From IMG/VR virus record IMGVR_UViG_3300042350_004528, positions 186,001-250,000 of that record: a stretch of DNA of 64,000 bases; one strand, given 5' to 3'. The translations under genes were made by a program, and so were the position numbers. Numbering within the stretch: the stretch's first letter is position 1; every line of letters begins with the position of its first letter. The notes beneath the pieces were generated by a model. That model saw only the letters and a list, made by a program, of their open reading frames with translations, searched no databases and had not been told where the DNA came from. Positions 19,092-52,065 of this stretch are shown one piece after another.

Positions 19092-19144
19092 TACTTGCAC
19101 ATTAAATTTATTTCATTTACATTTGCCTCCAAATCAAAAACGCA

Positions 19145-19360: not shown

Positions 19361-19551
19361 GTAAGGTAGCAAAACTGGTTACAATATCCCTGATGACAAG
19401 AGTCATCGTGGATGAGAATGCAAGTGAGGAAGAGATTTTGAATTCTGCCAGACCTAAATTCATTCAGAAGGTTCAGGAAGAACTGAATGAAAACATCGAG
19501 GAAATTTGGTACGACAATGAATGTCCCTACGACCCTGAATTCGACAATTAA
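19357..19551 (+). CDS. Hypothetical protein, 64 aa
   Basis: ATGA-coupled. Confidence 0.78.
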   Translation: MSKVAKLVTISLMTRVIVDENASEEEILNSARPKFIQKVQEELNENIEEIWYDNECPYDPEFDN

Positions 19552-19605
19552 AATCTTTTTGTATTCAAATTTGCACATTAAAAAAATTATACTTATCTTT
19601 GCTGT

Positions 19606-19926
19606 ATGGAAAAATCAATGAGAACAGCGGCTGTATGTTCAAACTACGCCCTGAAAATAAAAGAAGCCCTTGTTCAAATGGCTGTTGAGGATAAACTCCC
19701 AATGGATATGACCACTTTGAATACGGATGAATTCGAAAACATTCTCGAACCGCTTGTTCGCAAGGTTGTCCGTGACGAGGACGAGAATGCAATCCCTGAG
19801 AGCATTCAGGTTGGTGTTTACTACTATGAGGATGATGAAACAGGGAAGCCTGTGTTTGATACTGATAGTATGATGGATGAATTCGAAAATGAGTTGAAAA
19901 AACTTGAAGACAAGTTTGCGAGTTAA
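19606..19926 (+). CDS. Acidic hypothetical protein, 106 aa
   Basis: Leaderless-type start; ends KFAS. Confidence 0.8.
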   Translation: MEKSMRTAAVCSNYALKIKEALVQMAVEDKLPMDMTTLNTDEFENILEPLVRKVVRDEDENAIPESIQVGVYYYEDDETGKPVFDTDSMMDEFENELKKLEDKFAS

Positions 19927-19955
19927 ATTAAATTCACTTATATTTGCATAACACA

Positions 19956-20258
19956 ATGACAAACTATACTGATTTCAATGAAGAGGTTGGCAAGATTCGG
20001 GTGAGGCTAGCCCAACAAACCGAAGCTTTACTTAAGCCCGCGATTCCGCCAGCCATTTACAACTGCAAGAACGAAGGCATTGCCATATCGACAGCAGAAG
20101 GTACGATGAAAGTTGAAACCATTGGTTACGACAACGGCGGAGTATTCGTTAAAACCGAAACAGGTGAGGTATGGGATTACATGGATTTGGACACTGATGA
20201 TATGGTCGCGATTTACGAGCATGTTTGGTACCAAATTAATTCCGCACCTATGAGGTGA
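19956..20258 (+). CDS. Hypothetical protein, 100 aa
   Basis: Start corrected to MTNYT. Confidence 0.8.
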   Translation: MTNYTDFNEEVGKIRVRLAQQTEALLKPAIPPAIYNCKNEGIAISTAEGTMKVETIGYDNGGVFVKTETGEVWDYMDLDTDDMVAIYEHVWYQINSAPMR

Positions 20259-20405
20259 GTCTTTGTGTGATGTTTTGTTTTGATGATGAAGAGGAGACCT
20301 AGTGTCTCCTTTTCTGATTATACCAGGATCAACAGCAAAAAAAGTTGATTTCAGATTTGCACATTAAATTTAATTCATTTATATTTGCATTCAAAACAAA
20401 ACGAA

Positions 20406-20621
20406 ATGGCTAAACCAAAATTTTACGAGTGTGTGATTTCATTTACATACGAAGCGGAGAACCCAACAGACGCCGCGAGGCAGTTTATCGCAAACATTCA
20501 GAACAATCCAAACTGGAATGTACTGGTGAAAGATTGTGAGAACTTTGAGAACACCTTTAATGTTGATACGGAAACAGGTGAGTGTGAAACCAATTCAATC
20601 GAGGATTATGACGACCTGTAA
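20406..20621 (+). CDS. Hypothetical protein, 71 aa
   Basis: Start corrected to MAKPKFY. Confidence 0.8.
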   Translation: MAKPKFYECVISFTYEAENPTDAARQFIANIQNNPNWNVLVKDCENFENTFNVDTETGECETNSIEDYDDL

Positions 20622-20820
20622 AGCCCTGACAGCACATATTGTTGAAGAAGGAAACCTGATCGACAGGTGGCCCTGTGATGTTAACGAAGAGAATGAGATG
20701 CAATCAAACGGGTCTCAGGAATTTCTTTATGAATATAACGGGAACAAGTACTGTGTCTGGATGGACTGGAACGACAATCCAATCCTACCTGGTGAAATTT
20801 TATCACCAATTCCTGAATAA
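20608..20820 (+). CDS. Hypothetical protein, 70 aa
   Basis: Start corrected to MTTCK. Confidence 0.7.
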   Translation: MTTCKALTAHIVEEGNLIDRWPCDVNEENEMQSNGSQEFLYEYNGNKYCVWMDWNDNPILPGEILSPIPE

Positions 20821-20875
20821 AATTTGCAGGTTAAAAAAATTATACTTATATTTGCATCATTAAATCAAAACAAAT

Positions 20876-21160
20876 ATGTCAAAGCCCACAGCAAAAGAAA
20901 CGGTAGAAACCGTAACCAATTACCTGAACAGTTTCTCGAGCAAAGAGAAGGAATTCATTGAGGAAATGAACAGGGAACATCGCACACTTCAACAGTCATT
21001 CACAAAACTATGTCTGGCATGGCTTGAGAACTGCGCCAATGAAGAATATCGTTTTGATGGAAGGAATGAAGCGAGTCACACTGTATCGAAGGAACTCGTT
21101 GAGAACTTCAAGTGGAACAAGGATGGTTTCAAACCATCTGAATTCTTACCCTGTATATAA
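20876..21160 (+). CDS. Hypothetical protein, 94 aa
   Basis: EHRTLQQSF..DGRNEAS. Confidence 0.85.
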   Translation: MSKPTAKETVETVTNYLNSFSSKEKEFIEEMNREHRTLQQSFTKLCLAWLENCANEEYRFDGRNEASHTVSKELVENFKWNKDGFKPSEFLPCI

Positions 21161-21193
21161 AAAAAAGAGGGGACTTTTACATCCCCTCATTTT

Positions 21194-21364
21194 TTATTGT
21201 ACCGAGTCTGTGGTTGTGGAAACATTCGTAGTGTCTACGCTTGTGGTATCGGTAACAACAGCGGTTGAGTCCGTAGCTGTTGTTGACTCGGTGGATTCCG
21301 ATCCGCAAGATACAACTGTCAACATTGAAGCGACAATTGCAAGTGTCATGAGAATTCTTTTCAT
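21194..21364 (-). CDS. Short Thr/Ser/Asp-rich lipoprotein, 56 aa
   Basis: Lipobox VVSC; four D-(S/T)-(T/V) sequons. Confidence 0.8.
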   Translation of the reverse strand: MKRILMTLAIVASMLTVVSCGSESTESTTATDSTAVVTDTTSVDTTNVSTTTDSVQ

Positions 21365-21470
21365 GTCCACAATATTAAACAAAAAATAGATAAATGTCAA
21401 GCAAATTAGACAAAAAAAAATTTGCAGGTTAAAAAAATTACATTTACATTTGTATTCAAAATCAAAAGCA

Positions 21471-21815
21471 ATGAAATATAAACAGCAAGCTCCAATTGAT
21501 GATTGGTCAGACATCGACAAGTGCATCAAGAATTCTGAAATCAACCTGAAACATTTACAGGACATTGACAAAGCTCAGGAAGCCAAAGGTGAACCCTTAC
21601 TTTACCGTTACTTTTACAGGCCTGTCGCTGACGGTCGAGCTTGGTATCAGGTGACGAAGGTTACATCTAGAACAGCTACCGTCACATGGTGCGCAGGGAT
21701 TTGTCTTGACGACTATGTTGATATGATGTTGGGTGAGGAAGCTACGATATCTCGCGGCATGATTGAGAACATGGTGAATGGAAGAATTGCACTTGAAAAA
21801 TTATTTGCACATTAA
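21471..21815 (+). CDS. Hypothetical protein, 114 aa
   Basis: PVADGRAWYQV; ends LFAH. Confidence 0.83.
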   Translation: MKYKQQAPIDDWSDIDKCIKNSEINLKHLQDIDKAQEAKGEPLLYRYFYRPVADGRAWYQVTKVTSRTATVTWCAGICLDDYVDMMLGEEATISRGMIENMVNGRIALEKLFAH

Positions 21816-21860
21816 ATTTTTTCCATTTATATTTGTATTCATAAATCAAAAACAAAATAT

Positions 21861-22484
21861 ATGCACAAAGGAGTAATCTTATTAGTAAAAGCGGATGACC
21901 GCGATGACGCCATTGGCCAAGCCAACGAGTTTCTTGACCACTATGGGGATGGCGATGTATGGGATTGGTTCGTAATCGGTGGCCGTTGGAGCGGTAACCT
22001 GAACACCCTATCGAAAACTTTCTACGAGAAAGCAAAGGTTCTTTTCGAACAAGCATATCCAAATGAGGATAGCCCATTCTTGTCAACCAAAATGGTTGAG
22101 GAGCAAGCACAGGGTTTGCAAGAGATTTGGGAAAGCATTGGCGGGAAAGGTCAGAACCCATATTCTCGCAGCAGTTATATCAGTGACGGATTTGAGGATG
22201 ATTGTCTCCCGTTGACTGATTGCATTCCCGTCATTCAGGATTGGAAGAAAGATATGGTGGCGGAGGCTGAAACCATTTGGAATAAAATGATTGAGGCCAA
22301 GAAAGATAGTGCGGACAAGTACGATATGTCAGGGTACTACGCAGGTATCTATCGTGACTTAAAGTATGATAATTTCTCTTTCGAGAGTAATGTCTACGAT
22401 GTCGTCAATCACACGAACGACCCCTCGCAGGCTTTGGAGAACCCCGAGCAGTGGTGGGCGGTTCAAATTGATATGCACAATTAA
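21861..22484 (+). CDS. Phage hypothetical protein, 207 aa
   Basis: WDWFVIGGRWSG..IDMHN. Confidence 0.87.
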   Translation: MHKGVILLVKADDRDDAIGQANEFLDHYGDGDVWDWFVIGGRWSGNLNTLSKTFYEKAKVLFEQAYPNEDSPFLSTKMVEEQAQGLQEIWESIGGKGQNPYSRSSYISDGFEDDCLPLTDCIPVIQDWKKDMVAEAETIWNKMIEAKKDSADKYDMSGYYAGIYRDLKYDNFSFESNVYDVVNHTNDPSQALENPEQWWAVQIDMHN

Positions 22485-22572
22485 TATTCCTCTTATCATT
22501 CCACAAAGGGGAGGTTTTTAAAATCTCCCTTTTTTTTTATCACATTTGTAAAATCAATTAATAACAGAGCAT

Positions 22573-22680
22573 ATGTCTAAGTCAGTAAAAGTAAAAATCA
22601 CGAAGAGTACATTCAAGTATGTAAGCAAACCAACAACTAAACAGGGCCGTGTGCCAAAACCCTCATCCAAAAAAAGATAG
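22573..22680 (+). CDS. 35-aa Lys-rich peptide
   Basis: MSKSVKVKITKSTFKYVSKPTTKQGRVPKPSSKKR. Confidence 0.55.
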   Translation: MSKSVKVKITKSTFKYVSKPTTKQGRVPKPSSKKR

Positions 22681-22740
22681 ATTCACATTTGCAAGTTAAA
22701 AAAATTATACTTATCTTTGTCCCAATCAAAACAAAATAAT

Positions 22741-22995
22741 ATGGAACTTTTAGTTGGAACCAACCTTGAGGTTATGAGTAGGACAATTTACATCGCCGTT
22801 GATGTACAATTTGACAAGAACGGTGAAACCTACGAGGCTAATCTCACCTGTTGTTTATCGGAAGATATAAACATTGGATTTGATTCCTGGGATATCACAA
22901 TTGCAAACGAGGAAGAACTTCCTGAGTTAACGGCGGAAGAAACTGAGCAACTTAAAGAATTTGCAAAAAAATATGCCCAAGTACTTGCAAATTAA
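22741..22995 (+). CDS. Hypothetical protein, 84 aa
   Basis: Start corrected to MELLV; ends VLAN. Confidence 0.8.
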   Translation: MELLVGTNLEVMSRTIYIAVDVQFDKNGETYEANLTCCLSEDINIGFDSWDITIANEEELPELTAEETEQLKEFAKKYAQVLAN

Positions 22996-23034
22996 ATTTA
23001 TTACACTTATATTTGTAACCTAAATCAAAACAAT

Positions 23035-23649
23035 ATGTCAAAAGTATTCAAAGTAACTTCAGGTACAATGGTGTGTTCCGACCCTTGTTACGAAATCCCG
23101 ACTTGGTGTCAGGGTATCGTGAGTAATGTGAAAAACGGAAATTGGGAAGCGGGTATTGAAACTTCCGATGAAGGCTCTTGGGGTGAGCGTATCGCTCGTC
23201 TTTGGGTTTACAACTTGGAAGCGGCTATCAAAGACCCAAGTATAGTTAAAGCCATTGAGAATGGTGGTGGACACGAAATGCCTTTCAGTGCGGGTGTTGA
23301 TAGTGGTCAGTTCGGTTTCTTCGACCACGCCAACTATCGCAAAGATGATAGTGCGAAAGATTTACCACAATACGACTTCGGTGGTGACTTTGGAATGGGT
23401 ACTAACGAGGGTGATGCTTGGTATGGTGCTTGTTGTCATTTAACACTTGGTGAAGAAAATTGGGGTGTCCTACCAAATGGTGTTGTTTCTTCTTCAGGAT
23501 ATGGTGATGGCTCTTATGCAGTCACAGGTATCAAGAACGATGAGGGTGAGTATGTTGCGTTCTGCATTGTCTTTATCGGTAACGATGATGAGGAGGATAA
23601 CGATGATTTGGATTGGGGTGATTGGAACGAAACTACCGATGAGGATTAA
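23035..23649 (+). CDS. DUF4241-like protein
   Basis: SDPCY, GVDSGQ, SSGYGDGSY. Confidence 0.72.
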   Translation: MSKVFKVTSGTMVCSDPCYEIPTWCQGIVSNVKNGNWEAGIETSDEGSWGERIARLWVYNLEAAIKDPSIVKAIENGGGHEMPFSAGVDSGQFGFFDHANYRKDDSAKDLPQYDFGGDFGMGTNEGDAWYGACCHLTLGEENWGVLPNGVVSSSGYGDGSYAVTGIKNDEGEYVAFCIVFIGNDDEEDNDDLDWGDWNETTDED

Positions 23650-23763
23650 ATTGGGTTTTTAGGTTGGAGCCTCCTGATCAATTCAGGGGGCTTTTTTTTT
23701 CTTAAAAAATTTGCATATTAAATTTATTTCATTTATCTTTGCATTCATAAAATCAAAAACAAA

Positions 23764-24342
23764 ATGAATATTTTACCAAAATCAATTACTGACCGAGTGT
23801 CAATCAAGAATGTGAAAGAAAACTTCGGACACGACTTGGGTGGTTTCTTCTGCGACATCTACTTCGACAACAAGAAAGTAGGTTACCTGAACAATGATGG
23901 TTGGGGTGGTTGCCCTGACATTCGTACCTATGGTTTCGATGCAAAGCACAAAGCGATGATGAAATCATTTGAGGACTTCCTGACCGAGCAGAACTTCGCC
24001 CAGTTTGTTGCTGATGATTACAACAAACCGCACCCGCAAATGCCCAATGGTAAGAATGATTGGGTTGCTGATGATTTCAGGTTTGACAGCCAAGTTGAAT
24101 TCCTTTGTGAACGCCTGAACTTTATGAAAAGTATTGAACGCCAAACAAAGAAAGCAATCCTTTATGGTAACCCTCGTTCAACCAATTACAAGATAGTATC
24201 TTGGAAAGGTGCAAAGACACTTGAAGATGTTGTGAAGAGTATCGGTAATGCTCGTTTCAAGGTTGTTGTTGATGGTATCAAAGCCAAACTTGTTGAGGGG
24301 GAAATGATTTACAACACAAACCTCGAAAAGTTTTTGCAATAA
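23764..24342 (+). CDS. Hypothetical protein, 192 aa
   Basis: NDGWGG motif. Confidence 0.87.
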   Translation: MNILPKSITDRVSIKNVKENFGHDLGGFFCDIYFDNKKVGYLNNDGWGGCPDIRTYGFDAKHKAMMKSFEDFLTEQNFAQFVADDYNKPHPQMPNGKNDWVADDFRFDSQVEFLCERLNFMKSIERQTKKAILYGNPRSTNYKIVSWKGAKTLEDVVKSIGNARFKVVVDGIKAKLVEGEMIYNTNLEKFLQ

Positions 24343-24398
24343 AATTTGCACATTAAATTTATTTCACTTATCTTTGTACCAACAAAATCAAAAAACAT

Positions 24399-25016
24399 AT
24401 GGGATATTCAACCGATTTCTTTGGCTCATTGTCTTTGAGCCGACCAGCGACCATCGTAGAGAAGAACTACTTGGATAAACTCGCTGACACTCGCAGAATG
24501 AAACGCGATGTTAACAAACTCATGGAACTCTACAAAGGGGAACATGGCAATCCATTTGCTAAAGACAAGAACAACCCTGACGATATCTATGGTTTCAAAG
24601 GGGAATACTTTGTTGGGGCAGATGGTTTCAAGGGTCAGAATGGCGATGATAGTGTTATCGACCACAACAGCGCCAGTGGCGAGATTGGATGGGGAGAATA
24701 CAAAGGCGATTGGGTTTTGCGTGATAAATTACAAACCGAACTCAACGCTGATAAAATCAAACAGCCAGGTCTTTGGTTGCAATGGGTGCTTAACGAGGAT
24801 GGTACTGAACTATCATGGGATGGTAACGAAAAGTTTTACCACTACACCGAATGGTTGCAGTATCTTATCGCCCATTTCTTTGAGCCATGGGGTATCAAAC
24901 TCAATGGCGAGATTGAATGGGTTGGCGAGGACAGCAATGACCGAGGAAAGATTGTTGTGTCCGACAACCATGTTGAAATTCTTGACGCTGTTATAGGATA
25001 TCAGAAGAGGGGTTAA
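24399..25016 (+). CDS. Phage hypothetical protein, 205 aa
   Basis: MGYSTDF, QPGLWLQW, WDGNEKFY. Confidence 0.87.
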   Translation: MGYSTDFFGSLSLSRPATIVEKNYLDKLADTRRMKRDVNKLMELYKGEHGNPFAKDKNNPDDIYGFKGEYFVGADGFKGQNGDDSVIDHNSASGEIGWGEYKGDWVLRDKLQTELNADKIKQPGLWLQWVLNEDGTELSWDGNEKFYHYTEWLQYLIAHFFEPWGIKLNGEIEWVGEDSNDRGKIVVSDNHVEILDAVIGYQKRG

Positions 25017-25123
25017 TCCCCTCTTTTCCTGAATTCTGGATCGGATCAAAAAAAAATGTAAAAAAGTTTGCGTATTAAATTTATTCCACTTATCTTTGTA
25101 TCATAATTAAAAACCAAAATAAA

Positions 25124-25936
25124 ATGTACGAACTCGAAAAAATCAAAGAACTTGCACCTGCGGCTTTCCGTATGCCTGAAGACGGTGCTCAGGACGGTGT
25201 GTCAAAGCACTACCAATTCATGACCACCGCTGAAATCATTGACGGTCTTGGTGGAATGGGTTGGGATGTTCACTCGGCTATGCAACAAAAGTCGAAGAAG
25301 AACCCTGAAACCACAAAGCACATGTTGCGCTTCCGTAATGACAACTACGGTTCACTGGGTGTTAAGGGGAATGTTCCTGAAATCCTGTTAGTGAATTCTC
25401 ACGACCGCACAACCTCATTGAACTTTCATGTGGGTATCTTCCGCATCATCTGTTCGAACGGCTTGGTGGTTGCTGATGAAACATTCAACAAGTTCCGTAT
25501 TCGTCACATGGGTACAACATTCGATGAGGTTAAGGGATTAATCAACAACATCACTGAGAACCTACCAACTGTGTTCAATACAATCAACCGCTTCGAGGGT
25601 GTGATTATGAGTGAGGAGGCACAAACCGAGTTCGCTATGCGAGCATTCGCTATCCGCTTCCCTGAGTACATCAACCCAAAGACAAACGCTTTGGACACCA
25701 AGAAAGTAATGAAGAATGTATCAGTTGATGAAATCCTGAAAGCAGTTCGTCCTGAGGACAATGGCCCTGACTTGTGGAGAGTTTACAACCGAGTTCAGGA
25801 GAAACTCATCAAGGGTGGCTTCCAACATCAAGGCGAGGGGCAGAAGCCTCGTGCTTCACGCCCTATCAGCAACATTCGTATGAATGTCCTGATTAACAAA
25901 GGCCTGTGGAACTTGGCGGAGGAGTTCGCTAACTAA
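25124..25936 (+). CDS. DUF932/DUF945 family protein
   Basis: KHMLRFR, NSHD, GIFRIICSNG, LWRVYNRVQE. Confidence 0.85.
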   Translation: MYELEKIKELAPAAFRMPEDGAQDGVSKHYQFMTTAEIIDGLGGMGWDVHSAMQQKSKKNPETTKHMLRFRNDNYGSLGVKGNVPEILLVNSHDRTTSLNFHVGIFRIICSNGLVVADETFNKFRIRHMGTTFDEVKGLINNITENLPTVFNTINRFEGVIMSEEAQTEFAMRAFAIRFPEYINPKTNALDTKKVMKNVSVDEILKAVRPEDNGPDLWRVYNRVQEKLIKGGFQHQGEGQKPRASRPISNIRMNVLINKGLWNLAEEFAN

Positions 25937-26037
25937 CTCACAATACACTTGAAAGAAAGGGGGAAGAAATTCCCTCTTTTTTTTTGCACATTAAATTTAA
26001 TTTACTTATCTTTGTTATCGAAATCAAAAACAATAAT

Positions 26038-26607
26038 ATGAAGTTACTTAATTTTGTGATGGTCGCCAAACACCTGACAGGTGACAGCGAAGTTTATTTC
26101 TTTCCTACAAAGGAGGAAGCAAGAACATTCTACAACAACAGAGTTAAACCGCTGTTGGATATTTGTATGAAGAACGAATTGGAGGAAGATGAGGCGTACT
26201 CATTCGGACAAACCAAAGATTGTGTTCGTTTCGATTGTGGTTACGATGAGGAACTTGATGCGATGCTTAACGAGTGTAATCATTACTATCGTGTGGACAG
26301 CGTTGAAGTTCCTGAAAATGTTACACACTATGTGGCTGACTTTTCCGAGTGGGTTGATGAGAGTGTTATCGAGTTCCACACCGAACAACAGGCAAAGGAA
26401 GTTTGGAACGATAAGATTGATGAGGAAATCAGGTTGGCTTCCGAGTATCATGGGATTGAGATTAGCAGACATCACCAAGAAACTTGGGAAGATAAATCAG
26501 GTATGACCTTGTTTCAGGAAACACATTACAGCGATATGTATTCCGATGCTTACTTTGGTCATTCAATGGATATGACTTGGACATTCAGGATTGGACAAAT
26601 AAATTAA
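26038..26607 (+). CDS. Hypothetical protein, 189 aa
   Basis: Start corrected to MKLLN. Confidence 0.83.
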   Translation: MKLLNFVMVAKHLTGDSEVYFFPTKEEARTFYNNRVKPLLDICMKNELEEDEAYSFGQTKDCVRFDCGYDEELDAMLNECNHYYRVDSVEVPENVTHYVADFSEWVDESVIEFHTEQQAKEVWNDKIDEEIRLASEYHGIEISRHHQETWEDKSGMTLFQETHYSDMYSDAYFGHSMDMTWTFRIGQIN

Positions 26608-26611
26608 TCTT

Positions 26612-26839
26612 ATGGCGATAAAAATCATTTACTACTCGGAGGTTATAGATAACTGGGGTAGAACAGAAAGTTCAATGAAAGGTGATATCATCTTCGCGGC
26701 CCTGAACAATGTTGAGGACTGGACTGACGATATGATGTTCGAGGGTGATGACGGTCGCAAGTATTCAATAGATGAGCTTGCAGGTAAAGAAGTTTGTGTA
26801 CCAGACATCGGGATATTCACCGTACCAGAAGAAGAATAA
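26612..26839 (+). CDS. Hypothetical protein, 75 aa
   Basis: ORF track. Confidence 0.78.
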   Translation: MAIKIIYYSEVIDNWGRTESSMKGDIIFAALNNVEDWTDDMMFEGDDGRKYSIDELAGKEVCVPDIGIFTVPEEE

Positions 26840-26896
26840 TTAACGGGGCTTAAAAGCCCCTTTATTTTTTTATCTGGGACGTTATATTTATCATGG

Positions 26897-27379
26897 ATGG
26901 TGAAGTCCCAGATTTTAAATGAGAGATCTTTTGATATAACAGACGGTGAACGATATTTAATTGTCGTGATCACCCCAGATAGATCGTACTCAGTTTTCAC
27001 CAGAAAGTACCAGAGCAAACCAGTTGTCTCTGTGGAATTCAAAGAAGCAAAACTTTATAAGGAGCTGAAGACAGCTCAGAATGTTGTGAAGGAAATCTTC
27101 CAGAACAATGAACACTACCAGGAATCTGTAATAAAGATATTCCAGGTGAAGGATCTATTCGAACCCAGATATTTTGTACAGTATATTAAAAAAGCTTACA
27201 TGAATTCTCCTGAGCTTAAGTGTTACATCGACTGGTACGTGATCGGCGAGAACCAGGTTGATACTTATCTGGATTACAGCGAAGCTCAAAAACATCTGGA
27301 CAAATACAAACGCGATCTACTTGAATTCTATTACAGCCAGATCATGAACATCAGGAGCTTCGACTTAAAAAAAATATAA
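26897..27379 (+). CDS. Hypothetical protein, 160 aa
   Basis: Preceded by TATTTAT rather than the array promoter. Confidence 0.8.
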   Translation: MVKSQILNERSFDITDGERYLIVVITPDRSYSVFTRKYQSKPVVSVEFKEAKLYKELKTAQNVVKEIFQNNEHYQESVIKIFQVKDLFEPRYFVQYIKKAYMNSPELKCYIDWYVIGENQVDTYLDYSEAQKHLDKYKRDLLEFYYSQIMNIRSFDLKKI

Positions 27380-27435
27380 AAAAAAACGGCTCCATTTCTG
27401 GAACCGTCTCTTCACCACTAAATCAAAAACAAAAA

Positions 27436-27702
27436 TCAATACTGGTAGTATGTGTATTCAATTGTGTCCCCCACCCTGTAACGGGCATGTTGAGGATCAA
27501 CTGTAACTGGAGCTGTGCTGTCCCAGAATTCATATCGGTAGCGCTTCTTGTAATTCAGTGTTGTTGGATCGTACTGTTCGATCGTGTCAACTTTCTTAAT
27601 CACATGTGGCACCACATGAATTGACTTCGGTGGTCTCTGGACACACCCTGTCACCAGGACAGTGAATACAAATATTAGTTTACGCACCTTTGGTAAATAC
27701 AT
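27436..27702 (-). CDS. Putative lipoprotein (start uncertain)
   Basis: LIFVFTVLVTGC lipobox. Confidence 0.65.
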   Translation of the reverse strand: MYLPKVRKLIFVFTVLVTGCVQRPPKSIHVVPHVIKKVDTIEQYDPTTLNYKKRYRYEFWDSTAPVTVDPQHARYRVGDTIEYTYYQY

Positions 27703-27913
27703 CTGGGTTTTCAAAATCAGTTTCAGTATCCAGAAACATGAATGAATCCTCCAACTCCTCATCGGTGAGTTTAACATCTTCCGACAAAGAATTCAGAAAG
27801 TCCATTGCTTCCCGTTTGCTGTTGAAATACTTGTAGTCTGTGTTGTCCTCATTCATAAGGTACTCCAAACCATTTAACGATATGCCCTCAATGGGTCTTC
27901 CAATTATTATCAT
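27680..27913 (-). CDS. Hypothetical protein, 77 aa
   Basis: GRPIEGISLNGLEYL; leaderless-type start. Confidence 0.82.
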   Translation of the reverse strand: MIIIGRPIEGISLNGLEYLMNEDNTDYKYFNSKREAMDFLNSLSEDVKLTDEELEDSFMFLDTETDFENPDVFTKGA

Positions 27914-27991
27914 ATGACAAAGGTAATTTAAATTTATTTAATATGCAAGAAACTGGGGAAGTTTTTTTCTCCCCCAGTTAATTTTATTACA

Positions 27992-28837
27992 TTATTCCCA
28001 AGGTGTATCAAAGTTATCGAATGGGTTTTCTGGGAAGCAAGAGTTCTCATCATTCCATTCTTCTTCCGAAATTACATTTCCGTCCTCACCAACATAAACT
28101 CTTTGTTCAACATTGTAGTTATATACAACGCCATCCAAAACATATTCTGGTTCACCCTCCGCTAACATAAGTTCACCATCCTCGCTGTAAGCACAACCCG
28201 CGAACCAGTTTCCAGTTTCCATAAACACCAGTTTGAAGTTCAAGTTCGGAAACATTTTGATAACTTTTCCCAACCAGTTGATTGGTGGCGACCAGGCGGA
28301 GTTGAAGTTAATTGTAATATAGTTTTCGTTATCTGTATCGAAACCCATTTCCTCTGACGAGCAATCCCACTTTGTTCCCCAGTTCATAACATTCCAGTCG
28401 TACCAGTTGTCAGTCCCATACTCTTCAATAAGAGCCTCTCGCTTCTCTTCTGTACCATTGGCACATTCAATTAGTTCTGGAATTTCAATTGGTATCTTTG
28501 CTTCATTCAATTGGTTGTTGATGAAGTCCCTGTCGGTTTTGTCTGTGGTCTCCAGAAGTTTTTTCTCCAGATCAGCGATCAACTCTTGTTGTTTCTCGAT
28601 ACGATTTTTTGCGTGGTTCACATCCCACTCGTTCACCCATTCACAATCACGAGGTGGTGATATGGTTCTGGAAAGTGGTTCTGGTGTCGGTAAGTAGTTC
28701 GACATTCTCCAGACAAGTTCTGTTTCACCTGTTTTGCTGTAACGCACAGGTTCTTCGGTAATTCCCATTGCAAGGAATTGTTTGAATTCTTTGGTATCAC
28801 CCGATACCTCTAAACGATTTTCGCACCAGTTTGGCAT
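27992..28837 (-). CDS. YubB/DUF1281 ferredoxin-like domain protein
   Basis: MPNWCEN, WYDW..NWGTKW, FNSAWSPP. Confidence 0.82.
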   Translation of the reverse strand: MPNWCENRLEVSGDTKEFKQFLAMGITEEPVRYSKTGETELVWRMSNYLPTPEPLSRTISPPRDCEWVNEWDVNHAKNRIEKQQELIADLEKKLLETTDKTDRDFINNQLNEAKIPIEIPELIECANGTEEKREALIEEYGTDNWYDWNVMNWGTKWDCSSEEMGFDTDNENYITINFNSAWSPPINWLGKVIKMFPNLNFKLVFMETGNWFAGCAYSEDGELMLAEGEPEYVLDGVVYNYNVEQRVYVGEDGNVISEEEWNDENSCFPENPFDNFDTPWE

Positions 28838-28979
28838 AGTATATTGTTTTTGATTTCGAGAGCAAATATACACCATATATTTTTAACTCGCAAACTTTAT
28901 CACAAAAAACTTTTTTCATTTTTATTTGCACATTAAATTTATTGCACTTATCTTTGTGTCGAAATCAAAAATAAAAATC

Positions 28980-29723
28980 ATGTTTAATCTAGGGTACACG
29001 TACAAGAAGCCTACCACACTGTTTGGTACGCAGAATGCAAAGACAAAGAAAGGTGAAAAACTGGGGTATACAACCTATATCCTGTATATGTCACCAGAAA
29101 AACAAAACACGCTTGGCAAGAACATTTGCCCGAAAGCCACAGCAGGCTGTTCGAAGTCATGTCTCTTCACAGCGGGTCGTGGCAAGTTTAGCAATGTCAT
29201 GAAAGGTCGTCTGAATAAGACTGAATACTTTCTTCGTGACAAGGTGAACTTCATGGACGATGTTGTTAAGGAAATTAAAAAGGGTATTAAAAAACATGGT
29301 GCGGGTGCAATGTGCGTTCGTCTCAATGGTACCTCTGATATTCCTTACGAGAACATTCCAGTGGGTGGTTTTAAAAATGTCATGGAAATGTTTCCTGATG
29401 TGCAATTTTACGATTACACAAAGATCTATTCAAGGTTGACAAAGCAATTGCCTGCGAACTATCACCTTACCTTTTCCAGGGCGGAGACAGAGGACAACCA
29501 ACGCGAAGCGGACAAAGCACTCGCACTTGGTTTCAATGTCGCTGTTGTTTTCGCTGTTAAGGACGAGACAGAACTTCCCGCTGAATACAACAATGCAAAG
29601 GTTATCAATGGTGACGAGCACGATCTTACTTTCTTACATGGCAATGGTGTTGTCGTGGGGTTGAAAGCAAAGGGTGAAGCAAAGAAAGATGATACAGGTT
29701 TCGTAGTAAGGGGTTGTAACTAA
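28980..29723 (+). CDS. Gp88-like phage protein (Cys cluster, radical-SAM-like)
   Basis: CPKATAGCSKSCL, RLNGTSD, FYDYTK, NYHLTFS, GLKAKG. Confidence 0.78.
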   Translation: MFNLGYTYKKPTTLFGTQNAKTKKGEKLGYTTYILYMSPEKQNTLGKNICPKATAGCSKSCLFTAGRGKFSNVMKGRLNKTEYFLRDKVNFMDDVVKEIKKGIKKHGAGAMCVRLNGTSDIPYENIPVGGFKNVMEMFPDVQFYDYTKIYSRLTKQLPANYHLTFSRAETEDNQREADKALALGFNVAVVFAVKDETELPAEYNNAKVINGDEHDLTFLHGNGVVVGLKAKGEAKKDDTGFVVRGCN

Positions 29724-29784
29724 CCCCTTATTTTTTTTTGCATTCAGACTTGCAAGTTAAATTAAATTCATATACCTTTGTCAT

Positions 29785-30102
29785 ATGAAAGCAAAACAAA
29801 ACAATTATCCAAAGTTTATCATCCGTTGGAACGGTCGATTCCATAAGGGTCTGATAACCGAAGACTTCGTCTTCTACTGTAACTACCAGGAAGGAGATGA
29901 TAACGGCAATGTTGAGATGTATCGCAGGGTTGAATCTAACCCGCATGACAGGGACAACAGCGGGCTAGAATTGGTATCGAACAATTACTTTGCTAGCGTT
30001 GGTCTCTTCGAAGCGCTCGAGGCGGGCGTCTGGGAATACATCTCACCAACCATGAAACTGAATTATAAACTAGCAAAAGAAGCGGGACAATTCGATGAGT
30101 AA
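29785..30102 (+). CDS. Hypothetical protein, 105 aa
   Basis: Leaderless-type start. Confidence 0.8.
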   Translation: MKAKQNNYPKFIIRWNGRFHKGLITEDFVFYCNYQEGDDNGNVEMYRRVESNPHDRDNSGLELVSNNYFASVGLFEALEAGVWEYISPTMKLNYKLAKEAGQFDE

Positions 30103-30406
30103 GAAAGAAAGAAAAATATACGAGACCTCTGTAATATACAGAGGGTACCAGACATTTAAACTGTGCTGGGCCACCTCATATGCTGAAGCTGCCAGGATCT
30201 TGGATGTGGCCCCTAGTTACCTTAAGAATTACGGCCTGTCTTATAAACGCGATCGGGATTTTGACTTCGAGGGTTGTTATGGGTATATCGATTCAGGTGA
30301 GATCATCTTTGGTGAACCAGGACGACCTGATCTGATGAGAAAACTTATGCCATGGGCGGAGTTGACGGAGATCGTTGATACTTATATTAAAGAGAAATAC
30401 GAATGA
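30095..30406 (+). CDS. Hypothetical protein, 103 aa
   Basis: Coupled ORF. Confidence 0.75.
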   Translation: MSKKERKIYETSVIYRGYQTFKLCWATSYAEAARILDVAPSYLKNYGLSYKRDRDFDFEGCYGYIDSGEIIFGEPGRPDLMRKLMPWAELTEIVDTYIKEKYE

Positions 30407-30768
30407 GACCAGAATTCAAGATATACAGGAATCTACACAGAGACTGTTTCAGTGTGATGAGATGGAACCAGGAGAAGAGAGGGTACCGTCTGTATCAGCA
30501 TGTCAAGGATCTAGAAGCTTACGGCGTAACGTTCAGGGTATCTCAGGCTGGACGGGCCAGGGTTCTGGAGACGAAGCAAAAGAATGTACATGCATTCGTA
30601 TGCTGCCAAGAATTCAAGCTTGCTTCTGGGGCCGCGAACCTGGGTGAGGAGATCTACTACAATCCATACAAGATGGAAACGTTCAGGATCAAGAGCTCGG
30701 ACGAATCGATTCTGAATGCAGATTCGGTTATCATGACGAATAATAAATGTTATTTAAATGTGATCTGA
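30403..30768 (+). CDS. Phage hypothetical protein, 121 aa
   Basis: YRNLH..FSV, KNVHAFV, YNPY. Confidence 0.82.
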   Translation: MRPEFKIYRNLHRDCFSVMRWNQEKRGYRLYQHVKDLEAYGVTFRVSQAGRARVLETKQKNVHAFVCCQEFKLASGAANLGEEIYYNPYKMETFRIKSSDESILNADSVIMTNNKCYLNVI

Positions 30769-30772
30769 ATTC

Positions 30773-31324
30773 ATGGGCGGAGATGAGAGAAGCGCGATAG
30801 AAGTGATCGCTGAATTCACGTCACCATTTGAGGATTCACTTAACGTGTTAATCCTAGGTGATCATATAGATGATCTTGAGGCTGCTGAAGTAAAGGCGGC
30901 GTTCGATCGAACCAGGAATGAATTCCTGAGTCTGCCATCGGTGGACGAGGAGAAGATGGCCCCGATCAAATATATTAAAATTAATACATCCGAATTTTTC
31001 AGGGGGAAGATCAGTAATAAAATTAAGAAGGAACCCTGTGTTGTATATCTGGATCACGAGCTCAGCAAAAATGCTTTGAACATCCTCACCAATAATAACA
31101 GTGAGGTGGATGATCTGGAGGAAATGCTTCTGGAGAAATATCTTTTCGGGATCAACCAGGAAAAATTTATTCTGGATCTCACCAGCTGTCTGGATGAAAG
31201 GATCGAACTTCTCATGAGTGCCATGGACGCCAGAGCTGGGGAATTCAATTATGTTCTGGTGGAAAAGTATCTGGCGATCTGGATATATGCGCTTGACGAA
31301 TTCGCCCCATTTCAGTTCGATTAA
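30773..31324 (+). CDS. Hypothetical protein, 183 aa
   Basis: ORF track. Confidence 0.75.
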   Translation: MGGDERSAIEVIAEFTSPFEDSLNVLILGDHIDDLEAAEVKAAFDRTRNEFLSLPSVDEEKMAPIKYIKINTSEFFRGKISNKIKKEPCVVYLDHELSKNALNILTNNNSEVDDLEEMLLEKYLFGINQEKFILDLTSCLDERIELLMSAMDARAGEFNYVLVEKYLAIWIYALDEFAPFQFD

Positions 31325-31386
31325 AAAAAAGATAAAAAAAGTTTCAAAAAAACTTGCATAATAAAAAAAGTTGTATTACATTTGTA

Positions 31387-31470
31387 GTCCTTAAGAGTTC
31401 AGGCCTGGGAGGCAACCCTTTCTCTCTGTTTTGTTTTTGATTTCAAAAAGTCCTCCCAGGTTCTGTTCTC
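31387..31470 (+). ncRNA. Putative small RNA 4 (hairpin with anti-leader loop)
   Basis: Array-type promoter 31353-31384 with no ORF; CCUGGGAGG(31404-12)/CCUCCCAGG(31452-60) stem; loop UUUUGUUUUUGAUUUC. Confidence 0.62.
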
Positions 31471-31609
31471 GAATTCAAGTTTAAGTTTCTACTAGAATTC
31501 AACCCCGTATAATTTTTAGAATTCATATTGCTGGATCTTCCAGAATTCATATCCGTAACTTTTTTAGAATTCATATATAAATAAAAAAGGTGAACCCTTT
31601 TAGAATTCA
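31471..31609. repeat. GAATTCA repeats at 24-bp period
   Basis: GAATTCA at 31471, 31495, 31519, 31543, 31567, then 31603. Confidence 0.9.
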
Positions 31610-31634
31610 CCTTTCAGTTTTTTTATGTATTCAC

Positions 31635-31892
31635 TTATTCGTCATCCGCTTCTTTCTTGCGTCTGGTCTTTCTGGTTGGTAAACCTCTTTTCTCACGTAT
31701 CCTGTCCCTGAGTTCCATCACCTTCAGGATGGCTGTGATCACCGCGATGAAAAGACCGAGGATCACACCGATCAATTGTAGGAGATCTGTTGCACTCATG
31801 GTGATTGATAACATTGATGATAATATTCCGTATTCAGGTTTTTTAGTTAGTGTATCCGTTAATTGGGTGATGAGTGTGTCCTTCATTTTCAA
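31635..31892 (-). CDS. Holin-like small membrane protein
   Basis: TM helix followed by very basic tail; ACTATTTAT upstream. Confidence 0.5.
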   Translation of the reverse strand: MKMKDTLITQLTDTLTKKPEYGILSSMLSITMSATDLLQLIGVILGLFIAVITAILKVMELRDRIREKRGLPTRKTRRKKEADDE

Positions 31893-32037
31893 TACTGTTT
31901 TTGTTTATTTTTTTGTATACAAATAAATAGTATGAATGAATAGAAAACGCCCGTTGTTAACTCGAATACATTATTTTTTTTTAAAAAAATTTGCACATTA
32001 AATTTTAATGTGTTATCTTTGATTAAATTAAAATAAT

Positions 32038-32331
32038 ATGAATGCAATAAATACAGCCTATACATTGGGTTTGGTCGCCATGTATTTTATCATGGGCGGA
32101 GAATTCACATTCTGGGTGTTCATGACCTCGGTCTTGATCGCACTGATTCCACTGACAACTTCGAACCTGTTATTCGCGACCCCGATCGTGGTTCTGATCT
32201 GGTGTTTCTTTTTCACCAGCAGTACAGTTTACGATTCCGACTTCGCGTGGTTATGCATCCTGTATGCACCCTTCCATTACACCTCATTCATATCCCATGT
32301 CATAGACGCCATCGAGGGCATTTTCGATTAA
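32038..32331 (+). CDS. Multi-TM membrane protein, 97 aa
   Basis: Hydrophobic; last array promoter 31990-32021. Confidence 0.78.
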   Translation: MNAINTAYTLGLVAMYFIMGGEFTFWVFMTSVLIALIPLTTSNLLFATPIVVLIWCFFFTSSTVYDSDFAWLCILYAPFHYTSFISHVIDAIEGIFD

Positions 32332-32409
32332 ATTTACGCCGTTTTTTTAATAATTTAAAAAAAATATATCGAAAACTGTCGAGGGGCTCAAATTTTTTTC
32401 ACTTGTTCC

Positions 32410-32462
32410 TGGGTGGGAAATGGGATTTTGTGGGGGTAAGTGGGGGATTGTGGGAAATAGTG
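32410..32462 (+). repeat. TGGG repeats at 10-bp period
   Basis: TGGG at 32421, 32431, 32441, 32451, plus 32410 and 32414. Confidence 0.85.
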
Positions 32463-32608
32463 TAAGTAACTGATTATCAGGTAATTCAGTGACTGTCAGT
32501 GAGTTATCTGAATGCACTCATTTTCAGTCAGTTGCGGGTATGTGTGTTTCTCGGCAGAATTCACATGGGATCCTGGGCAATATAATGTAAAATGAATGCA
32601 TTTTAAGG

Positions 32609-32905
32609 CTATTTAAGCGCACTTCGTGCTGCTGTGGTAGCCTCTATCATTTTATTGTATTCAATCCACTGAAGGTATGTTTTCTCCTCGAATACTCTGG
32701 TGTATTTATTACAGTTTTTCACTCCGTACTTCCATACAACCTTCATGATATTTTCATCCTCAGCCAGAGAGCTGTACCATGTGAGTATTCTTTTTTTACC
32801 CTTCATGTATACAAACTCATCTCCTTCTTTCAGACTGTGAATTCCATTCTCAAGCTCCTGAAGAATGAATACACCTTTCATATGATTCACTCTTATTGTA
32901 TTCAC
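32609..32905 (-). CDS. Hypothetical protein, 98 aa
   Basis: Last gene of the - strand block. Confidence 0.75.
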   Translation of the reverse strand: MNTIRVNHMKGVFILQELENGIHSLKEGDEFVYMKGKKRILTWYSSLAEDENIMKVVWKYGVKNCNKYTRVFEEKTYLQWIEYNKMIEATTAARSALK

Positions 32906-33132
32906 TTCTTCTGTACGATATCAATATATTCTTTTAATCTATTCGCAGCCCTCTGACTCGGTTTTCCATTCTCAACCGTGAACAAATACTTCTCAAAGAA
33001 ATACCTCAGCGCTTCCACGTCCGATAGTTTTGCATCTGGCAATGTTTCCTTGTTCGATTCCTTACATTCTCCTGTGCAAGATTCCCCACAACTGTAAAGA
33101 CATCCTTGCGTTCCTGAATAACCTATACCCAT
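32902..33132 (-). CDS. Hypothetical protein with Cys-rich N-terminus
   Basis: CLYSCGESCTGEC. Confidence 0.75.
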   Translation of the reverse strand: MGIGYSGTQGCLYSCGESCTGECKESNKETLPDAKLSDVEALRYFFEKYLFTVENGKPSQRAANRLKEYIDIVQKK

Positions 33133-42210: not shown

Positions 42211-42220
42211 AATTTTTAAT

Positions 42221-42397
42221 TTATTTTACAACATTAAGTAAAAAAAGTGTGATGTAAACCATAGATACAACTGTCATAAATTTAATTGTCATGGCGATGA
42301 TGGGTTTAGTACCGTTAACTTTAGCAACAAGCATGAAGGATCCTGTTGCATAGAACCAAATGATGGTTATGATCTTAGCAATGTCTAATATGTTCAT
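42221..42397 (-). CDS. Two-TM small membrane protein
   Basis: Hydrophobic, 58 aa. Confidence 0.65.
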   Translation of the reverse strand: MNILDIAKIITIIWFYATGSFMLVAKVNGTKPIIAMTIKFMTVVSMVYITLFLLNVVK

Positions 42398-42401
42398 AGT
42401 T

Positions 42402-42965
42402 TTAATTTTTAAATAAATCACTCAGGTATTGAAACATTTCAAAGTAAGGTTCGGTGGCATACCAAGTAAACCCCAACTTAGTCATGAATTCCTCATTTTC
42501 TTTTTTATACATCTCAAACATACGACTACCAGTCATCTTAGAGTATTGTACATTAGCGATACGATCACATAATTTAACAAATACAGCGCCTTTGGTATTA
42601 CGAATACCCTCATAGTATTTGTCATTGGCACGTTCCTTACGGTTCTTACCCTTTTCATTGGTTACAGCATAAATAATCTCAGCCGCTTCCTGACCCAAAA
42701 TATCTTTAACATCGTTATATGACACACGACAATCTTCGATCAAATCGTGGCCCCAACAAGCAAGCATACATGCGTGTTTAGTCGAAACCTGTGTGGTTGG
42801 ATTAACAACCACATCACCAGTAAAGTATTCTTTATCGTCTAAAAGATGGTTGTACTTCTCACCGACATGGGCCACCATTCTCAAGTGGAACTCATACGGT
42901 AAGTATGTGTCGTACATGTGGTTTGTTTCATTGTGCTTCTCAATGCACCATTTTTTCTTATCCAT
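42402..42965 (-). CDS. HD-domain (p)ppGpp hydrolase-like protein (SpoT/Mesh1 type)
   Basis: PYEFHL, HDLIED, VKLCDRIAN. Confidence 0.82.
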   Translation of the reverse strand: MDKKKWCIEKHNETNHMYDTYLPYEFHLRMVAHVGEKYNHLLDDKEYFTGDVVVNPTTQVSTKHACMLACWGHDLIEDCRVSYNDVKDILGQEAAEIIYAVTNEKGKNRKERANDKYYEGIRNTKGAVFVKLCDRIANVQYSKMTGSRMFEMYKKENEEFMTKLGFTWYATEPYFEMFQYLSDLFKN

Positions 42966-43064
42966 AATTTCTCTTGTTGTTACAAAGGTAAGAAAGAAAA
43001 ATTTAATAACCAAAAAAAGGGGATAATTATTTCTAATTACCCCCCAGCACTTGACATGGCATGC

Positions 43065-48286: not shown

Positions 48287-48287
48287 C

Positions 48288-52050: not shown

Positions 52051-52065
52051 ATTATTTTCTATTAG

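What the first reader, a model, noticed from the sequence alone, without database searches (positions are those of the whole stretch)
31471..31609. Five GAATTCA motifs at exact 24-bp period directly after sRNA 4
Seen: GAATTCA at 31471, 31495, 31519, 31543 and 31567 with variable 17-nt linkers (two alike: CCGTA...TTTTTAGAATTCATAT), and a sixth at 31603 inside a terminator hairpin. Inference: an iteron- or centromere-like protein-binding array (origin, partition or packaging), or periodic processing sites in the sRNA 4 read-through transcript that would release 24-nt RNAs.
Basis: partly seen in the sequence, partly recalled or inferred. Interest (0 to 1): 0.68.

Follow-up and report, generated by a model that had tools for sequence, protein, structure and literature searches.

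The report
Oriented GAATTCA site array, jumbo phage
Five evenly spaced GAATTCA copies in a lake-water giant phage are real, are kept in its relatives, and are the dense core of a one-directional cluster of the same short site, most likely docking sites for a protein on the DNA rather than a source of 24-letter RNAs.

Summary
Observation confirmed. GAATTCA sits at 31471, 31495, 31519, 31543 and 31567 (exact 24-nt period), with a sixth copy at 31603 in a bidirectional terminator. It is the only such cluster in the 298.8-kb phage genome.

The array is conserved. Relatives sharing 70-98% identity in the adjacent small membrane protein carry 2-5 copies at exactly 24 nt, and units are gained or lost in register. 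More distant relatives keep the motif (consensus Y-A-GAATTC-A-n-A-T) at 25, 34 or about 48 nt. Two relatives lack the array.

The array is only the peak of something larger. In four phages, about 5 kb ending at the array is packed with same-orientation AGAATTCA sites, including inside genes. Further upstream lies a zone of opposite orientation. Elsewhere the genome purges GAATTC.

The array lies in a transcribed stretch: a conserved promoter, a 5' hairpin whose loop is antisense to early-gene leaders, a terminator, and one metatranscriptome contig. But it also occurs without that promoter, or behind a separate terminator.

Best reading (about 0.45): oriented DNA recognition sites for a sequence-specific protein or DNA-tracking enzyme. 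An RNA-level platform is the main rival (about 0.25). Release of 24-nt RNAs, a CRISPR- or ToxI-like array and a minus-strand ORF are not supported.

The parts
31346..31385 (+). Bacteroidota-type promoter (TTG ... TAcaTTTG) of 'sRNA 4', reading into the array
   Evidence: The pattern scan finds it among about 70 similar early promoters. It is conserved in the relatives L051, L057, L052, L056, L072 and L074. That this is the Bacteroidota promoter consensus is from my own knowledge.
31404..31460 (+). 5' hairpin of sRNA 4: stem CCTGGGAGG / CCTCCCAGG with a large loop
   Evidence: Folded. The stem is kept in relatives through a paired 1-nt deletion (L046/L057) and through an A-U to G-C change (L072/L074, L052, L056).
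31423..31445 (+). 23-nt loop segment TCTCTGTTTTGTTTTTGATTTCA, antisense to the shared leaders of the phage's early genes
   Evidence: It is 100% identical in the diverged relative. Its mean duplex energy with 66 leaders is -10.0 kcal/mol, against -5.8 +/- 0.95 for 200 shuffles, none of which reach it, and -7.6 for the reversed loop.
31471..31590 (+). Five 24-nt units, each starting with GAATTCA (31471, 31495, 31519, 31543, 31567); unit consensus GAATTCATAT-N7-TTTTYA
   Evidence: The motif is invariant while linkers are about 59% identical to the 83%-identity relative, with no indel inside the units. Copy number is 2-5 at exactly 24 nt in close relatives.
31586..31624 (.). Bidirectional intrinsic terminator holding the sixth GAATTCA (31603-31609) in its 3' arm
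   Evidence: A GAATTCA copy is in the terminator of every relative looked at, including those without an array (L054, L062) and those with a different stem (L059, L064).
27526..32563 (+). 'Forward zone': every one of the genome's 11 top-strand AGAATTCA copies lies here; 13 of 18 GAATTC sites are oriented GAATTCA on the + strand
   Evidence: The same zone is found in G001 (14 of 14), G003 (16 of 17) and G002.
19440..27328 (-). 'Reverse zone': 10 of 14 GAATTC sites are oriented GAATTCA on the - strand, although they lie in + strand genes
   Evidence: Fisher test of zone against orientation: p = 4e-4 here and 1.5e-4 to 3e-4 in three relatives.
30773..31324 (+). 183-aa gene of unknown function just upstream of the array (P0001); holds 4 GAATTC sites, all as Glu-Phe codons
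   Evidence: Across eight homologues, 20 of 22 such sites are followed by a codon starting with A.
31635..31886 (-). 83-aa single-pass membrane protein, convergent with the array; used as the anchor to find relatives
   Evidence: 104 homologues. It gives a weak holin PHROG match, E = 4.7e-4.

Best explanation
The five GAATTCA copies are the tandem, highest-density core of a conserved, orientation-specific cluster of (Y)A-GAATTC-A(nAT) sites. The sites act at the DNA level. Each is most likely a recognition site for one sequence-specific protein, or for a DNA-tracking enzyme that reads the site in one direction only. Stacking 2-11 copies head-to-tail next to the convergent terminator would make recognition at this one locus near certain. 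Twenty-four bp is the length of the unit that was duplicated and roughly one protein footprint, so it is kept in register in this clade. The transcript that runs through the array (sRNA 4) is a separable module. Its conserved part is a hairpin loop antisense to early-gene leaders. Shown: the sites, their conservation, their orientation pattern, their presence inside genes on both strands, and the genome-wide purge of GAATTC elsewhere. Inferred: that a protein reads them, that the substrate is DNA, and which process is served (replication origin or fork barrier, packaging or entry signal, or Chi-like nuclease control).
For: (1) The motif is invariant while linkers drift. Against the relative with 83% identity in the neighbouring protein, all five aligned motif copies are intact (the window's first copy has decayed to GATTTTCA there) and linkers are about 59% identical. 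(2) Across 52 array copies from 9 phages, A is at -1 in 44, Y at -2 in 49, A at +6 in 51 and T at +9 in 41, always in the same orientation. (3) The sites continue outside the array into coding sequence at 2.6-5.9 per kb, against 0.11 per kb in the rest of this genome, even in relatives that lack the array. They occupy different reading frames and lie in genes on either strand: a 63-aa minus-strand ORF in L064 holds four, read as EF, EF, NS, NS. (4) An orientation switch 2.5-4 kb upstream of the array is present in all four phages examined. (5) All 11 top-strand AGAATTCA copies in 298.8 kb fall within 5 kb. (6) The array exists without the sRNA promoter (L058) and behind a separate terminator (L061). 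(7) Spacing clusters at 24-25 nt and 47-49 nt across clades. (8) In silico, the palindromic copies would pair with each other in RNA rather than be displayed single-stranded.
Against: No binding protein is identified: Pfam, PHROGs, Atlas and PDB searches of the neighbours gave no DNA-binding lead. The array is transcribed: it has a conserved promoter and terminator, and one metatranscriptome contig covers exactly 31405-31581. An RNA role therefore cannot be excluded. In the forward zone of this window nearly all sites are also sense-oriented in the local mRNAs. Spacings such as 11, 16, 18 and 41 nt show no helical phasing. No replication, partition or packaging gene was found among the genes scanned near the array. 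The near-absence of top-strand GAATTCA outside the island (1 of 31) is not reproduced in relative G003. The four phages are related, so their orientation patterns are not fully independent.
Confidence: 0.45

Rival explanations
1. RNA-level platform. The repeats work in the + strand transcript (sRNA 4, or the 3' UTR of the upstream operon) as multiple docking or cleavage sites for a sequence-specific RNA-binding protein or RNase, acting as a sponge or decoy. Alternatively they work as a multivalent 8-nt seed (AGAAUUCA) that pairs with the UGAAUUCU found in mRNAs of the reverse zone.
For: A conserved promoter, 5' hairpin and terminator frame the array. A riverine metatranscriptome has a single 177-nt contig at 31405-31581 and nothing on the flanking genes. 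Forward-zone sites in this window are sense in their mRNAs. Seven of the genome's ten TGAATTCT copies lie in + strand genes of the reverse zone and are perfect complements of the array motif.
Against: The array persists without its own promoter (L058) and after a terminator (L061). Same-orientation sites sit antisense in a minus-strand gene beyond the terminator. Dense sites remain in relatives with neither sRNA nor array (L054, L062). Predicted folds pair the palindromic motifs with each other: P(unpaired) is 0.12-0.33 for motifs against 0.5-0.75 for linkers. There is no complementarity beyond 8 nt. The RNA contig has low depth, its strand is unknown, and DNA carry-over is not excluded.
Confidence: 0.25
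2. Polar anti-nuclease or translocase signal (Chi/KOPS logic). This is a specific form of the DNA reading: the oriented motif is recognised by a host RecBCD/AddAB-type enzyme or another DNA motor approaching from the membrane-protein-gene side, and tandem copies raise the chance of recognition.
For: There are two opposed orientation zones in four phages. Tandem multiplicity comes with loose spacing. Sites are tolerated in any frame and on either coding strand. That tandem Chi copies raise recognition is from my own knowledge.
Against: Known Chi sequences are G-rich, not AT-rich palindromes (own knowledge). The host and its Chi are unknown. The sites are confined to about 13 kb rather than spread over the genome. 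No ends or breaks were mapped.
Confidence: 0.15
3. Neutral by-product. The units are slipped or duplicated copies of the terminator's loop and 3' arm (TTTTAGAATTCA) with no function of their own.
For: Each unit resembles the terminator's loop plus 3' arm. Copy number changes in register among near-identical phages. Two relatives do without the array.
Against: The motif is intact in all copies while linkers have drifted to near-random in their centre. The motif is kept in clades whose terminator stem is different. The same oriented site is enriched in neighbouring genes.
Confidence: 0.07
4. Guide-RNA or antitoxin-type array: processing into 24-nt RNAs, a CRISPR-like mini-array, or ToxI-like antitoxin repeats.
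For: A short constant part plus a variable 17-nt part at a fixed period, lying between a promoter and a terminator.
Against: The constant part is only 7-12 nt. Linkers of different units and phages are diverged copies of one another, not acquired sequences. The period differs between clades. The gene after the terminator is convergent rather than a downstream toxin gene, and no cas or toxN-like family was found in the neighbours. Rfam gives no match.
Confidence: 0.04
5. A small protein is encoded on the - strand (31443..31610, 55 aa), with 8-residue repeats (M/L)NSxxxxx.
For: The frame is open through all six copies here and in the 83%-identity relative. Twenty-four nt is eight codons.
Against: The motif copies fall into different frames in L051, L052, L056, L058, L059, L064 and L061. 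The variable residues are not conserved. The putative start codon lies inside the terminator stem. The other frames are closed simply because the motif itself supplies stop codons.
Confidence: 0.02

Closest known systems
Iteron arrays of phage and plasmid replication origins (for example ori-lambda and T4 oriE; from my own knowledge)
   Same: Several direct repeats at a regular spacing of about two helical turns. Copy number varies between relatives. A short AT-only stretch follows. Transcription runs into the repeats.
   Different: Only 8-11 bp are conserved instead of 17-22. No initiator gene is adjacent. The same site also spreads through several kb of coding DNA, with an orientation switch.
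Polar chromosome motifs read by DNA motors: Chi (RecBCD/AddAB), KOPS (FtsK), SRS (SpoIIIE) (own knowledge)
   Same: A short asymmetric site, tolerated in any reading frame, with strong orientation bias that flips at a defined point. Tandem copies would add up recognition probability.
   Different: Those motifs are spread over whole chromosomes and are G-rich. This one is confined to about 13 kb, has a palindromic restriction-type core, and no cognate enzyme is known.
Phage P1 pac site with seven TGATCA/G hexamers, and the lambda cosB R sites (own knowledge)
   Same: A cluster of short, partly palindromic hexamers at one unique locus of a phage genome, bound by a phage protein.
   Different: Here there is no terminase gene nearby, no mapped genome end, more copies, and extension into neighbouring genes.
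ToxI, the type III antitoxin RNA, and phage pseudo-ToxI (own knowledge)
   Same: Promoter, tandem short repeats, then terminator. Copy number changes quickly in phages.
   Different: ToxI repeats are 36 nt and nearly identical, fold into pseudoknots and precede a toxN gene. None of that holds here.
CsrB/RsmZ/CrcZ-type sponge sRNAs (own knowledge)
   Same: One sRNA with many copies of a short motif.
   Different: Those motifs sit in loops or single-stranded stretches at irregular spacing, with a known protein partner. Here the motif is self-complementary, is predicted to be paired, and also occurs outside the RNA.

Membership tests
Replication-origin iterons | Three or more direct repeats at regular spacing | tested here: met
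   Five copies at exactly 24 bp; 2-5 copies at 24 bp in close relatives.
Replication-origin iterons | Adjacent initiator (Rep/O-type) gene and an AT-rich unwinding element | tested here: inconclusive
   The neighbours hit only GP88, L5 gp82 and DUF1281_C, or nothing. Only a 16-nt AT-only stretch follows the last unit. GC skew follows gene orientation and marks no origin.
ParABS centromere (parS) | Palindromic parS of about 16 bp next to parA/parB genes | tested here: not met
   The site is asymmetric beyond the 6-bp core. The only ParB-like gene (14453-15280; PHROG E = 8e-14, no Pfam hit) lies 16 kb away, outside the cluster. A parA gene was not searched for.
CRISPR array | Near-identical repeats of 23-50 nt with unrelated spacers, plus cas genes | tested here: not met
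   The constant part is 7-12 nt. Linkers are diverged copies of each other. No cas family was found among the neighbours.
Type III toxin-antitoxin (ToxIN-like) | Near-identical repeats of about 36 nt, then a terminator, then a co-directional toxin gene | tested here: not met
   Units are under 70% alike. The next gene is convergent and encodes an 83-aa membrane protein.
Polar DNA motif (Chi/KOPS-like) | Asymmetric short motif with an orientation bias that switches at a defined point | tested here: met
   Forward and reverse zones in four phages, Fisher p = 1.5e-4 to 4e-4.
Polar DNA motif (Chi/KOPS-like) | Recognition by a translocating enzyme, and excess plus skew in the host chromosome | not testable with these tools
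   The host is unknown.
Known RNA families (Rfam 15) | Match to a curated covariance model | tested here: not met
   Only the tRNA-Met at 52066-52139 reaches a gathering score in the whole window.
Protein-sponge sRNA (CsrB-like) | Motif copies displayed unpaired in a stable sRNA | tested here: inconclusive
   The RNA is probably made, but the motifs are predicted to be mostly paired with one another.

The most novel reading that the evidence does not exclude
The array is the core of an undescribed polar cis-acting DNA signal system of freshwater Bacteroidota jumbo phages. It uses an 8-11-nt oriented site built on a restriction-type palindrome that the rest of the genome purges. The sites are laid out in two opposed zones and are read by a DNA-tracking machine, as a Chi-like nuclease switch, a translocase or entry stop, or a replication fork trap.
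Probability: 0.2. Interest if true: 0.85.

Novelty: new variant of a known kind. Interest (0 to 1): 0.62.

Why it matters
Almost nothing is known about the cis-acting signals (origins, packaging or entry signals, nuclease-control sites) of uncultured jumbo phages of Bacteroidota. Here a short site can be followed across a whole phage family. It is purged genome-wide yet stacked in one place, in one orientation, with a conserved polarity switch. That gives a concrete, testable handle on a unique genomic locus and on the factor that reads it. It also uncovers a conserved phage small RNA whose loop is antisense to the shared leaders of the phage's own early genes, a possible early-gene shut-off device. 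If the array were merely a terminator duplication, the finding would be ordinary; the conservation data argue against that.

Tried and rejected
- **Rfam:** the scan of the window found only a tRNA.
- **Phage BLAST:** blastn of 3.3 kb against 50,697 GenBank phage records found no match.
- **Tandem Repeats Finder:** it does not see the array.
- **Identical relatives:** three IMG/VR relatives were 100% identical and so uninformative.
- **Loop pattern scan:** a 19-nt loop pattern gave only chance hits beyond the known relatives.
- **Pattern scans for the array:** these mostly returned unrelated perfect tandem repeats. They did yield the relatives L021 and L064.
- **Minus-strand MNS-repeat ORF:** rejected by the frame test in relatives.
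- **GAATTC excess in the island:** part of it is explained by the island's different codon usage (TTC 67% against 20%; GAA-TTC 16 observed against 9.5 expected). The island still shares the total absence of CCGG, GGWCC and CTGCAG.
- **Phage methyltransferase or endonuclease:** no EcoRI methylase, N6_N4 methylase, Dam-type methylase or EcoRI family was found in the phage. The EcoRI control rang nowhere, so that blank is weak.
- **GC skew:** it follows gene orientation and marks no origin.
- **Neighbour proteins:** Pfam, PHROGs, Atlas and PDB gave no nucleic-acid-binding lead.
- **Genome-wide exclusion of top-strand GAATTCA outside the island:** it is 1 of 31 sites here, but it was not reproduced in relative G003, so I do not rely on it.
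- **Literature:** nothing was found on such arrays.
- **Failed call:** one script call returned no answer and was rerun.
- **Operator notes and unused tools:** No alternative genetic code was used. The large representative protein search, structure prediction and complex prediction were not used.

Full report
**What the window is.** The 64-kb window is positions 186,001-250,000 of a 298,833-bp IMG/VR virus record, 34% G+C, rated complete. It carries about 70 copies of a Bacteroidota-type promoter (TTG ... TAnnTTTG), most of them followed by a shared A/C-rich leader and an ORF. That this is the Bacteroidota promoter type is from my own knowledge. The same DNA is present in at least 16 lake-water metagenomes from 2020 to 2025. 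It is therefore a freshwater jumbo phage that probably infects Bacteroidota.

- GAATTCA lies at 31471, 31495, 31519, 31543 and 31567, an exact 24-nt period, and again at 31603.
- The copy at 31603 is the 3' arm of a hairpin that is followed by a T run and serves as a terminator for both strands.
- The array fills a 310-bp gap between convergent genes: 30773-31324 on the + strand and 31635-31886 on the - strand.
- By chance such an arrangement is expected about 2e-9 times per window.
- It is the only cluster in the genome.
- Units share GAATTCATAT-N7-TTTTYA. This is too little for Tandem Repeats Finder to detect.

**Conservation among close relatives.** Three IMG/VR contigs are identical. A pattern scan found one diverged relative (L021/L046) with the same gene order. 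Its neighbouring proteins are 78-83% identical to those of the window. In the alignment of the intergenic regions:
- the promoter is kept;
- the hairpin is kept through a compensating 1-nt deletion in each arm;
- a 23-nt loop segment is kept exactly;
- four GAATTCA copies are kept at exactly 24 nt;
- the linkers are only about 59% identical, with no indel inside the units.

**Conservation across the wider family.** The adjacent 83-aa membrane protein has 104 homologues. Their contigs show the following.

| Relative | Identity of membrane protein | Array copies and spacing (nt) |
|---|---|---|
| L074 | 98% | 5 copies at 24 |
| L072/L073 | 96% | 4 copies at 24 |
| L051 | 90% | 3 copies at 24 |
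| L052/L053 | 83% | 5 copies at 11, 16, 24, 24 |
| L056 | 70% | 2 copies at 24 |
| L058 | 64% | 3 copies at 25, 25 |
| L059 | 72% | mixed, including 24-25 |
| L060/L064 | 59% | mixed, including 24-25 |
| L061 | 69% | 11 copies at 34 and 47-49 |
| L054/L055 | 76% | no array; one copy in the terminator |
| L062 | 82% | no array; one copy in the terminator |

- The identity figure is and is the local alignment identity to the window's 83-aa protein; for L059, L061 and L062 that alignment covers only 72-81% of the protein.
- A second contig carrying the same membrane protein as L074 has an intergenic gap exactly 24 nt longer.
- Over 52 copies the consensus is Y-A-GAATTC-A-n-A-T, always in one orientation.

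**The array is the peak of something larger.**
- GAATTC is among the most avoided hexamers in this genome outside 205-219 kb: 31 sites against about 70-110 expected, depending on the Markov order. It is avoided together with other restriction-type palindromes: CCGG, GGWCC and CTGCAG are absent altogether.
- Inside that 14-kb island GAATTC is 22 times denser and is the most over-represented hexamer at every Markov order.
- Part of this excess follows from the island's different codon usage. But the island shares the other avoidances.
- Every relative shows 2.6-5.9 sites per kb around the locus, including those without an array.
- Near the array almost every site carries the flanking A's in the same orientation: L046 12 of 12, L056 11 of 11, L060 13 of 13, L062 10 of 10.
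- These sites lie within genes, in different reading frames. In L064 four lie inside a minus-strand ORF beyond the terminator.
- In the gene just upstream of the array, Glu-Phe is written GAA-TTC and is followed by a codon starting with A in 20 of 22 cases across eight phages.
- Further upstream, 2.5-4 kb from the array, the orientation flips. This is seen in the window and in three relatives, with Fisher p between 1.5e-4 and 4e-4.
- All 11 top-strand AGAATTCA copies of the genome lie within window 27,525-32,556. Seven of the ten TGAATTCT copies lie in the zone to its left.

**Transcription.**
- The array lies between a conserved promoter and a terminator.
- One riverine metatranscriptome has a single 177-nt contig on the 3.3 kb laid, at 31405-31581. 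That is the hairpin plus all five units. Two other RNA runs cover only the 97-aa gene at 32053-32338.
- This is modest evidence: depth is low, the strand is unknown, and DNA carry-over is possible.
- The hairpin loop is complementary to the leaders of 66 promoter-led genes. The mean duplex energy is -10.0 kcal/mol, against -5.8 +/- 0.95 for 200 shuffles and -7.6 for the reversed loop. The stem shows compensatory changes.
- I read sRNA 4 as an anti-leader RNA.
- The array is separable from it. L058 has the array directly after a stop codon, with no promoter or hairpin. L061 has a terminator between the sRNA-like part and its array.

**Weighing DNA against RNA.**
- For DNA: same-orientation sites occur in genes of both strands and in several frames; there is a polarity switch; dense sites persist in relatives with no sRNA; and the palindromic cores are predicted to pair with one another in RNA.
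- For RNA: the promoter and terminator frame the array; there is an RNA contig; and in this window the forward-zone sites are sense in their mRNAs.
- I put an oriented DNA recognition array at about 0.45. This includes a more specific Chi/KOPS-like reading at about 0.15.
- I put an RNA platform at about 0.25, a neutral terminator duplication at 0.07, a 24-nt RNA, CRISPR-like or ToxI-like array at 0.04, and a minus-strand ORF at 0.02. The ORF is refuted by inconsistent frames in seven relatives.

**Comparison with known systems (from my own knowledge).**
- It works most like iteron or pac-type repeat arrays, and like polar motifs such as Chi or KOPS.
- It is not a member of any of them. No initiator, ParA or terminase gene was found among the neighbours scanned, the site is only 8-11 bp, and it spreads through coding DNA.
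- It fails the defining features of CRISPR arrays and of ToxI.
- Rfam has no match.

**Limits.**
- The host, the reader protein, the genome ends and the replication origin are all unknown.
- The relatives are related to each other, so their patterns are not independent.
- My gene calls in the zone analysis are crude.

Noticed in passing
window 31404-31460, loop 31423-31445: The 'sRNA 4' hairpin loop (TCTCTGTTTTGTTTTTGATTTCA) is antisense to the shared A/C-rich leaders of the phage's early genes, giving 14-20-bp duplexes with several of them. It is identical in a relative whose neighbouring proteins are about 80% identical. This could be an early-gene shut-off RNA.
   Followed up: partly
whole genome (G000) and window 19000-33000: CCGG, GGACC/GGTCC and CTGCAG are completely absent from 298.8 kb, and CTATAG occurs once, which is extreme restriction-site avoidance. 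The island at window 19-33 kb has 40% G+C and a different codon usage (Phe TTC 67% against 20%), yet it shares these avoidances.
   Followed up: partly
window about 470-538 (-), about 3890-3964 (-), about 10035-10110 (+): Three further early-type promoters are followed by G+C-rich structured sequence instead of a leader and ORF. Rfam has no match for them.
   Followed up: no
window 31626-31634, and the same place in all relatives: A near-copy of the motif, ATGTATTCA, is conserved between the terminator and the stop codon of the membrane-protein gene in every relative looked at, including those without an array.
   Followed up: no
window 1-22000 and 31983: About 70 near-identical promoters (AAAATTTGCAAGTTAAATTTATTTCACTTATCTTTG) each lead a small ORF through a 'tatcaacaaaaacaaacaaaca-ATG' leader. 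This dense early region would break short-read assemblies, and several relatives' contigs end 1-4 kb from the array.
   Followed up: no
window 40759-50808 and 62101-63483: Auxiliary genes lie next to the island: a tyrosinase-domain protein, adenylosuccinate synthetase, an SPFH/Band 7 protein, an NAPRTase-family protein, a weak phosphoribosyltransferase-domain match (below Pfam's cut-off) and an RNA ligase. A tRNA-Met lies at 52065-52139.
   Followed up: no
L061 (252-kb relative), locus positions 1764-2635: This relative has an 11-copy version of the array with 34-nt and 48-nt units. The longer units carry small, differing stem-loops between the motif copies.
   Followed up: no
genome outside 205-219 kb: Only 1 of the 31 GAATTC sites outside the island has A at +6 on the top strand, while 12 have the reverse form. 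This is not reproduced in the 73-kb relative G003, so it may be chance or lineage-specific.
   Followed up: partly
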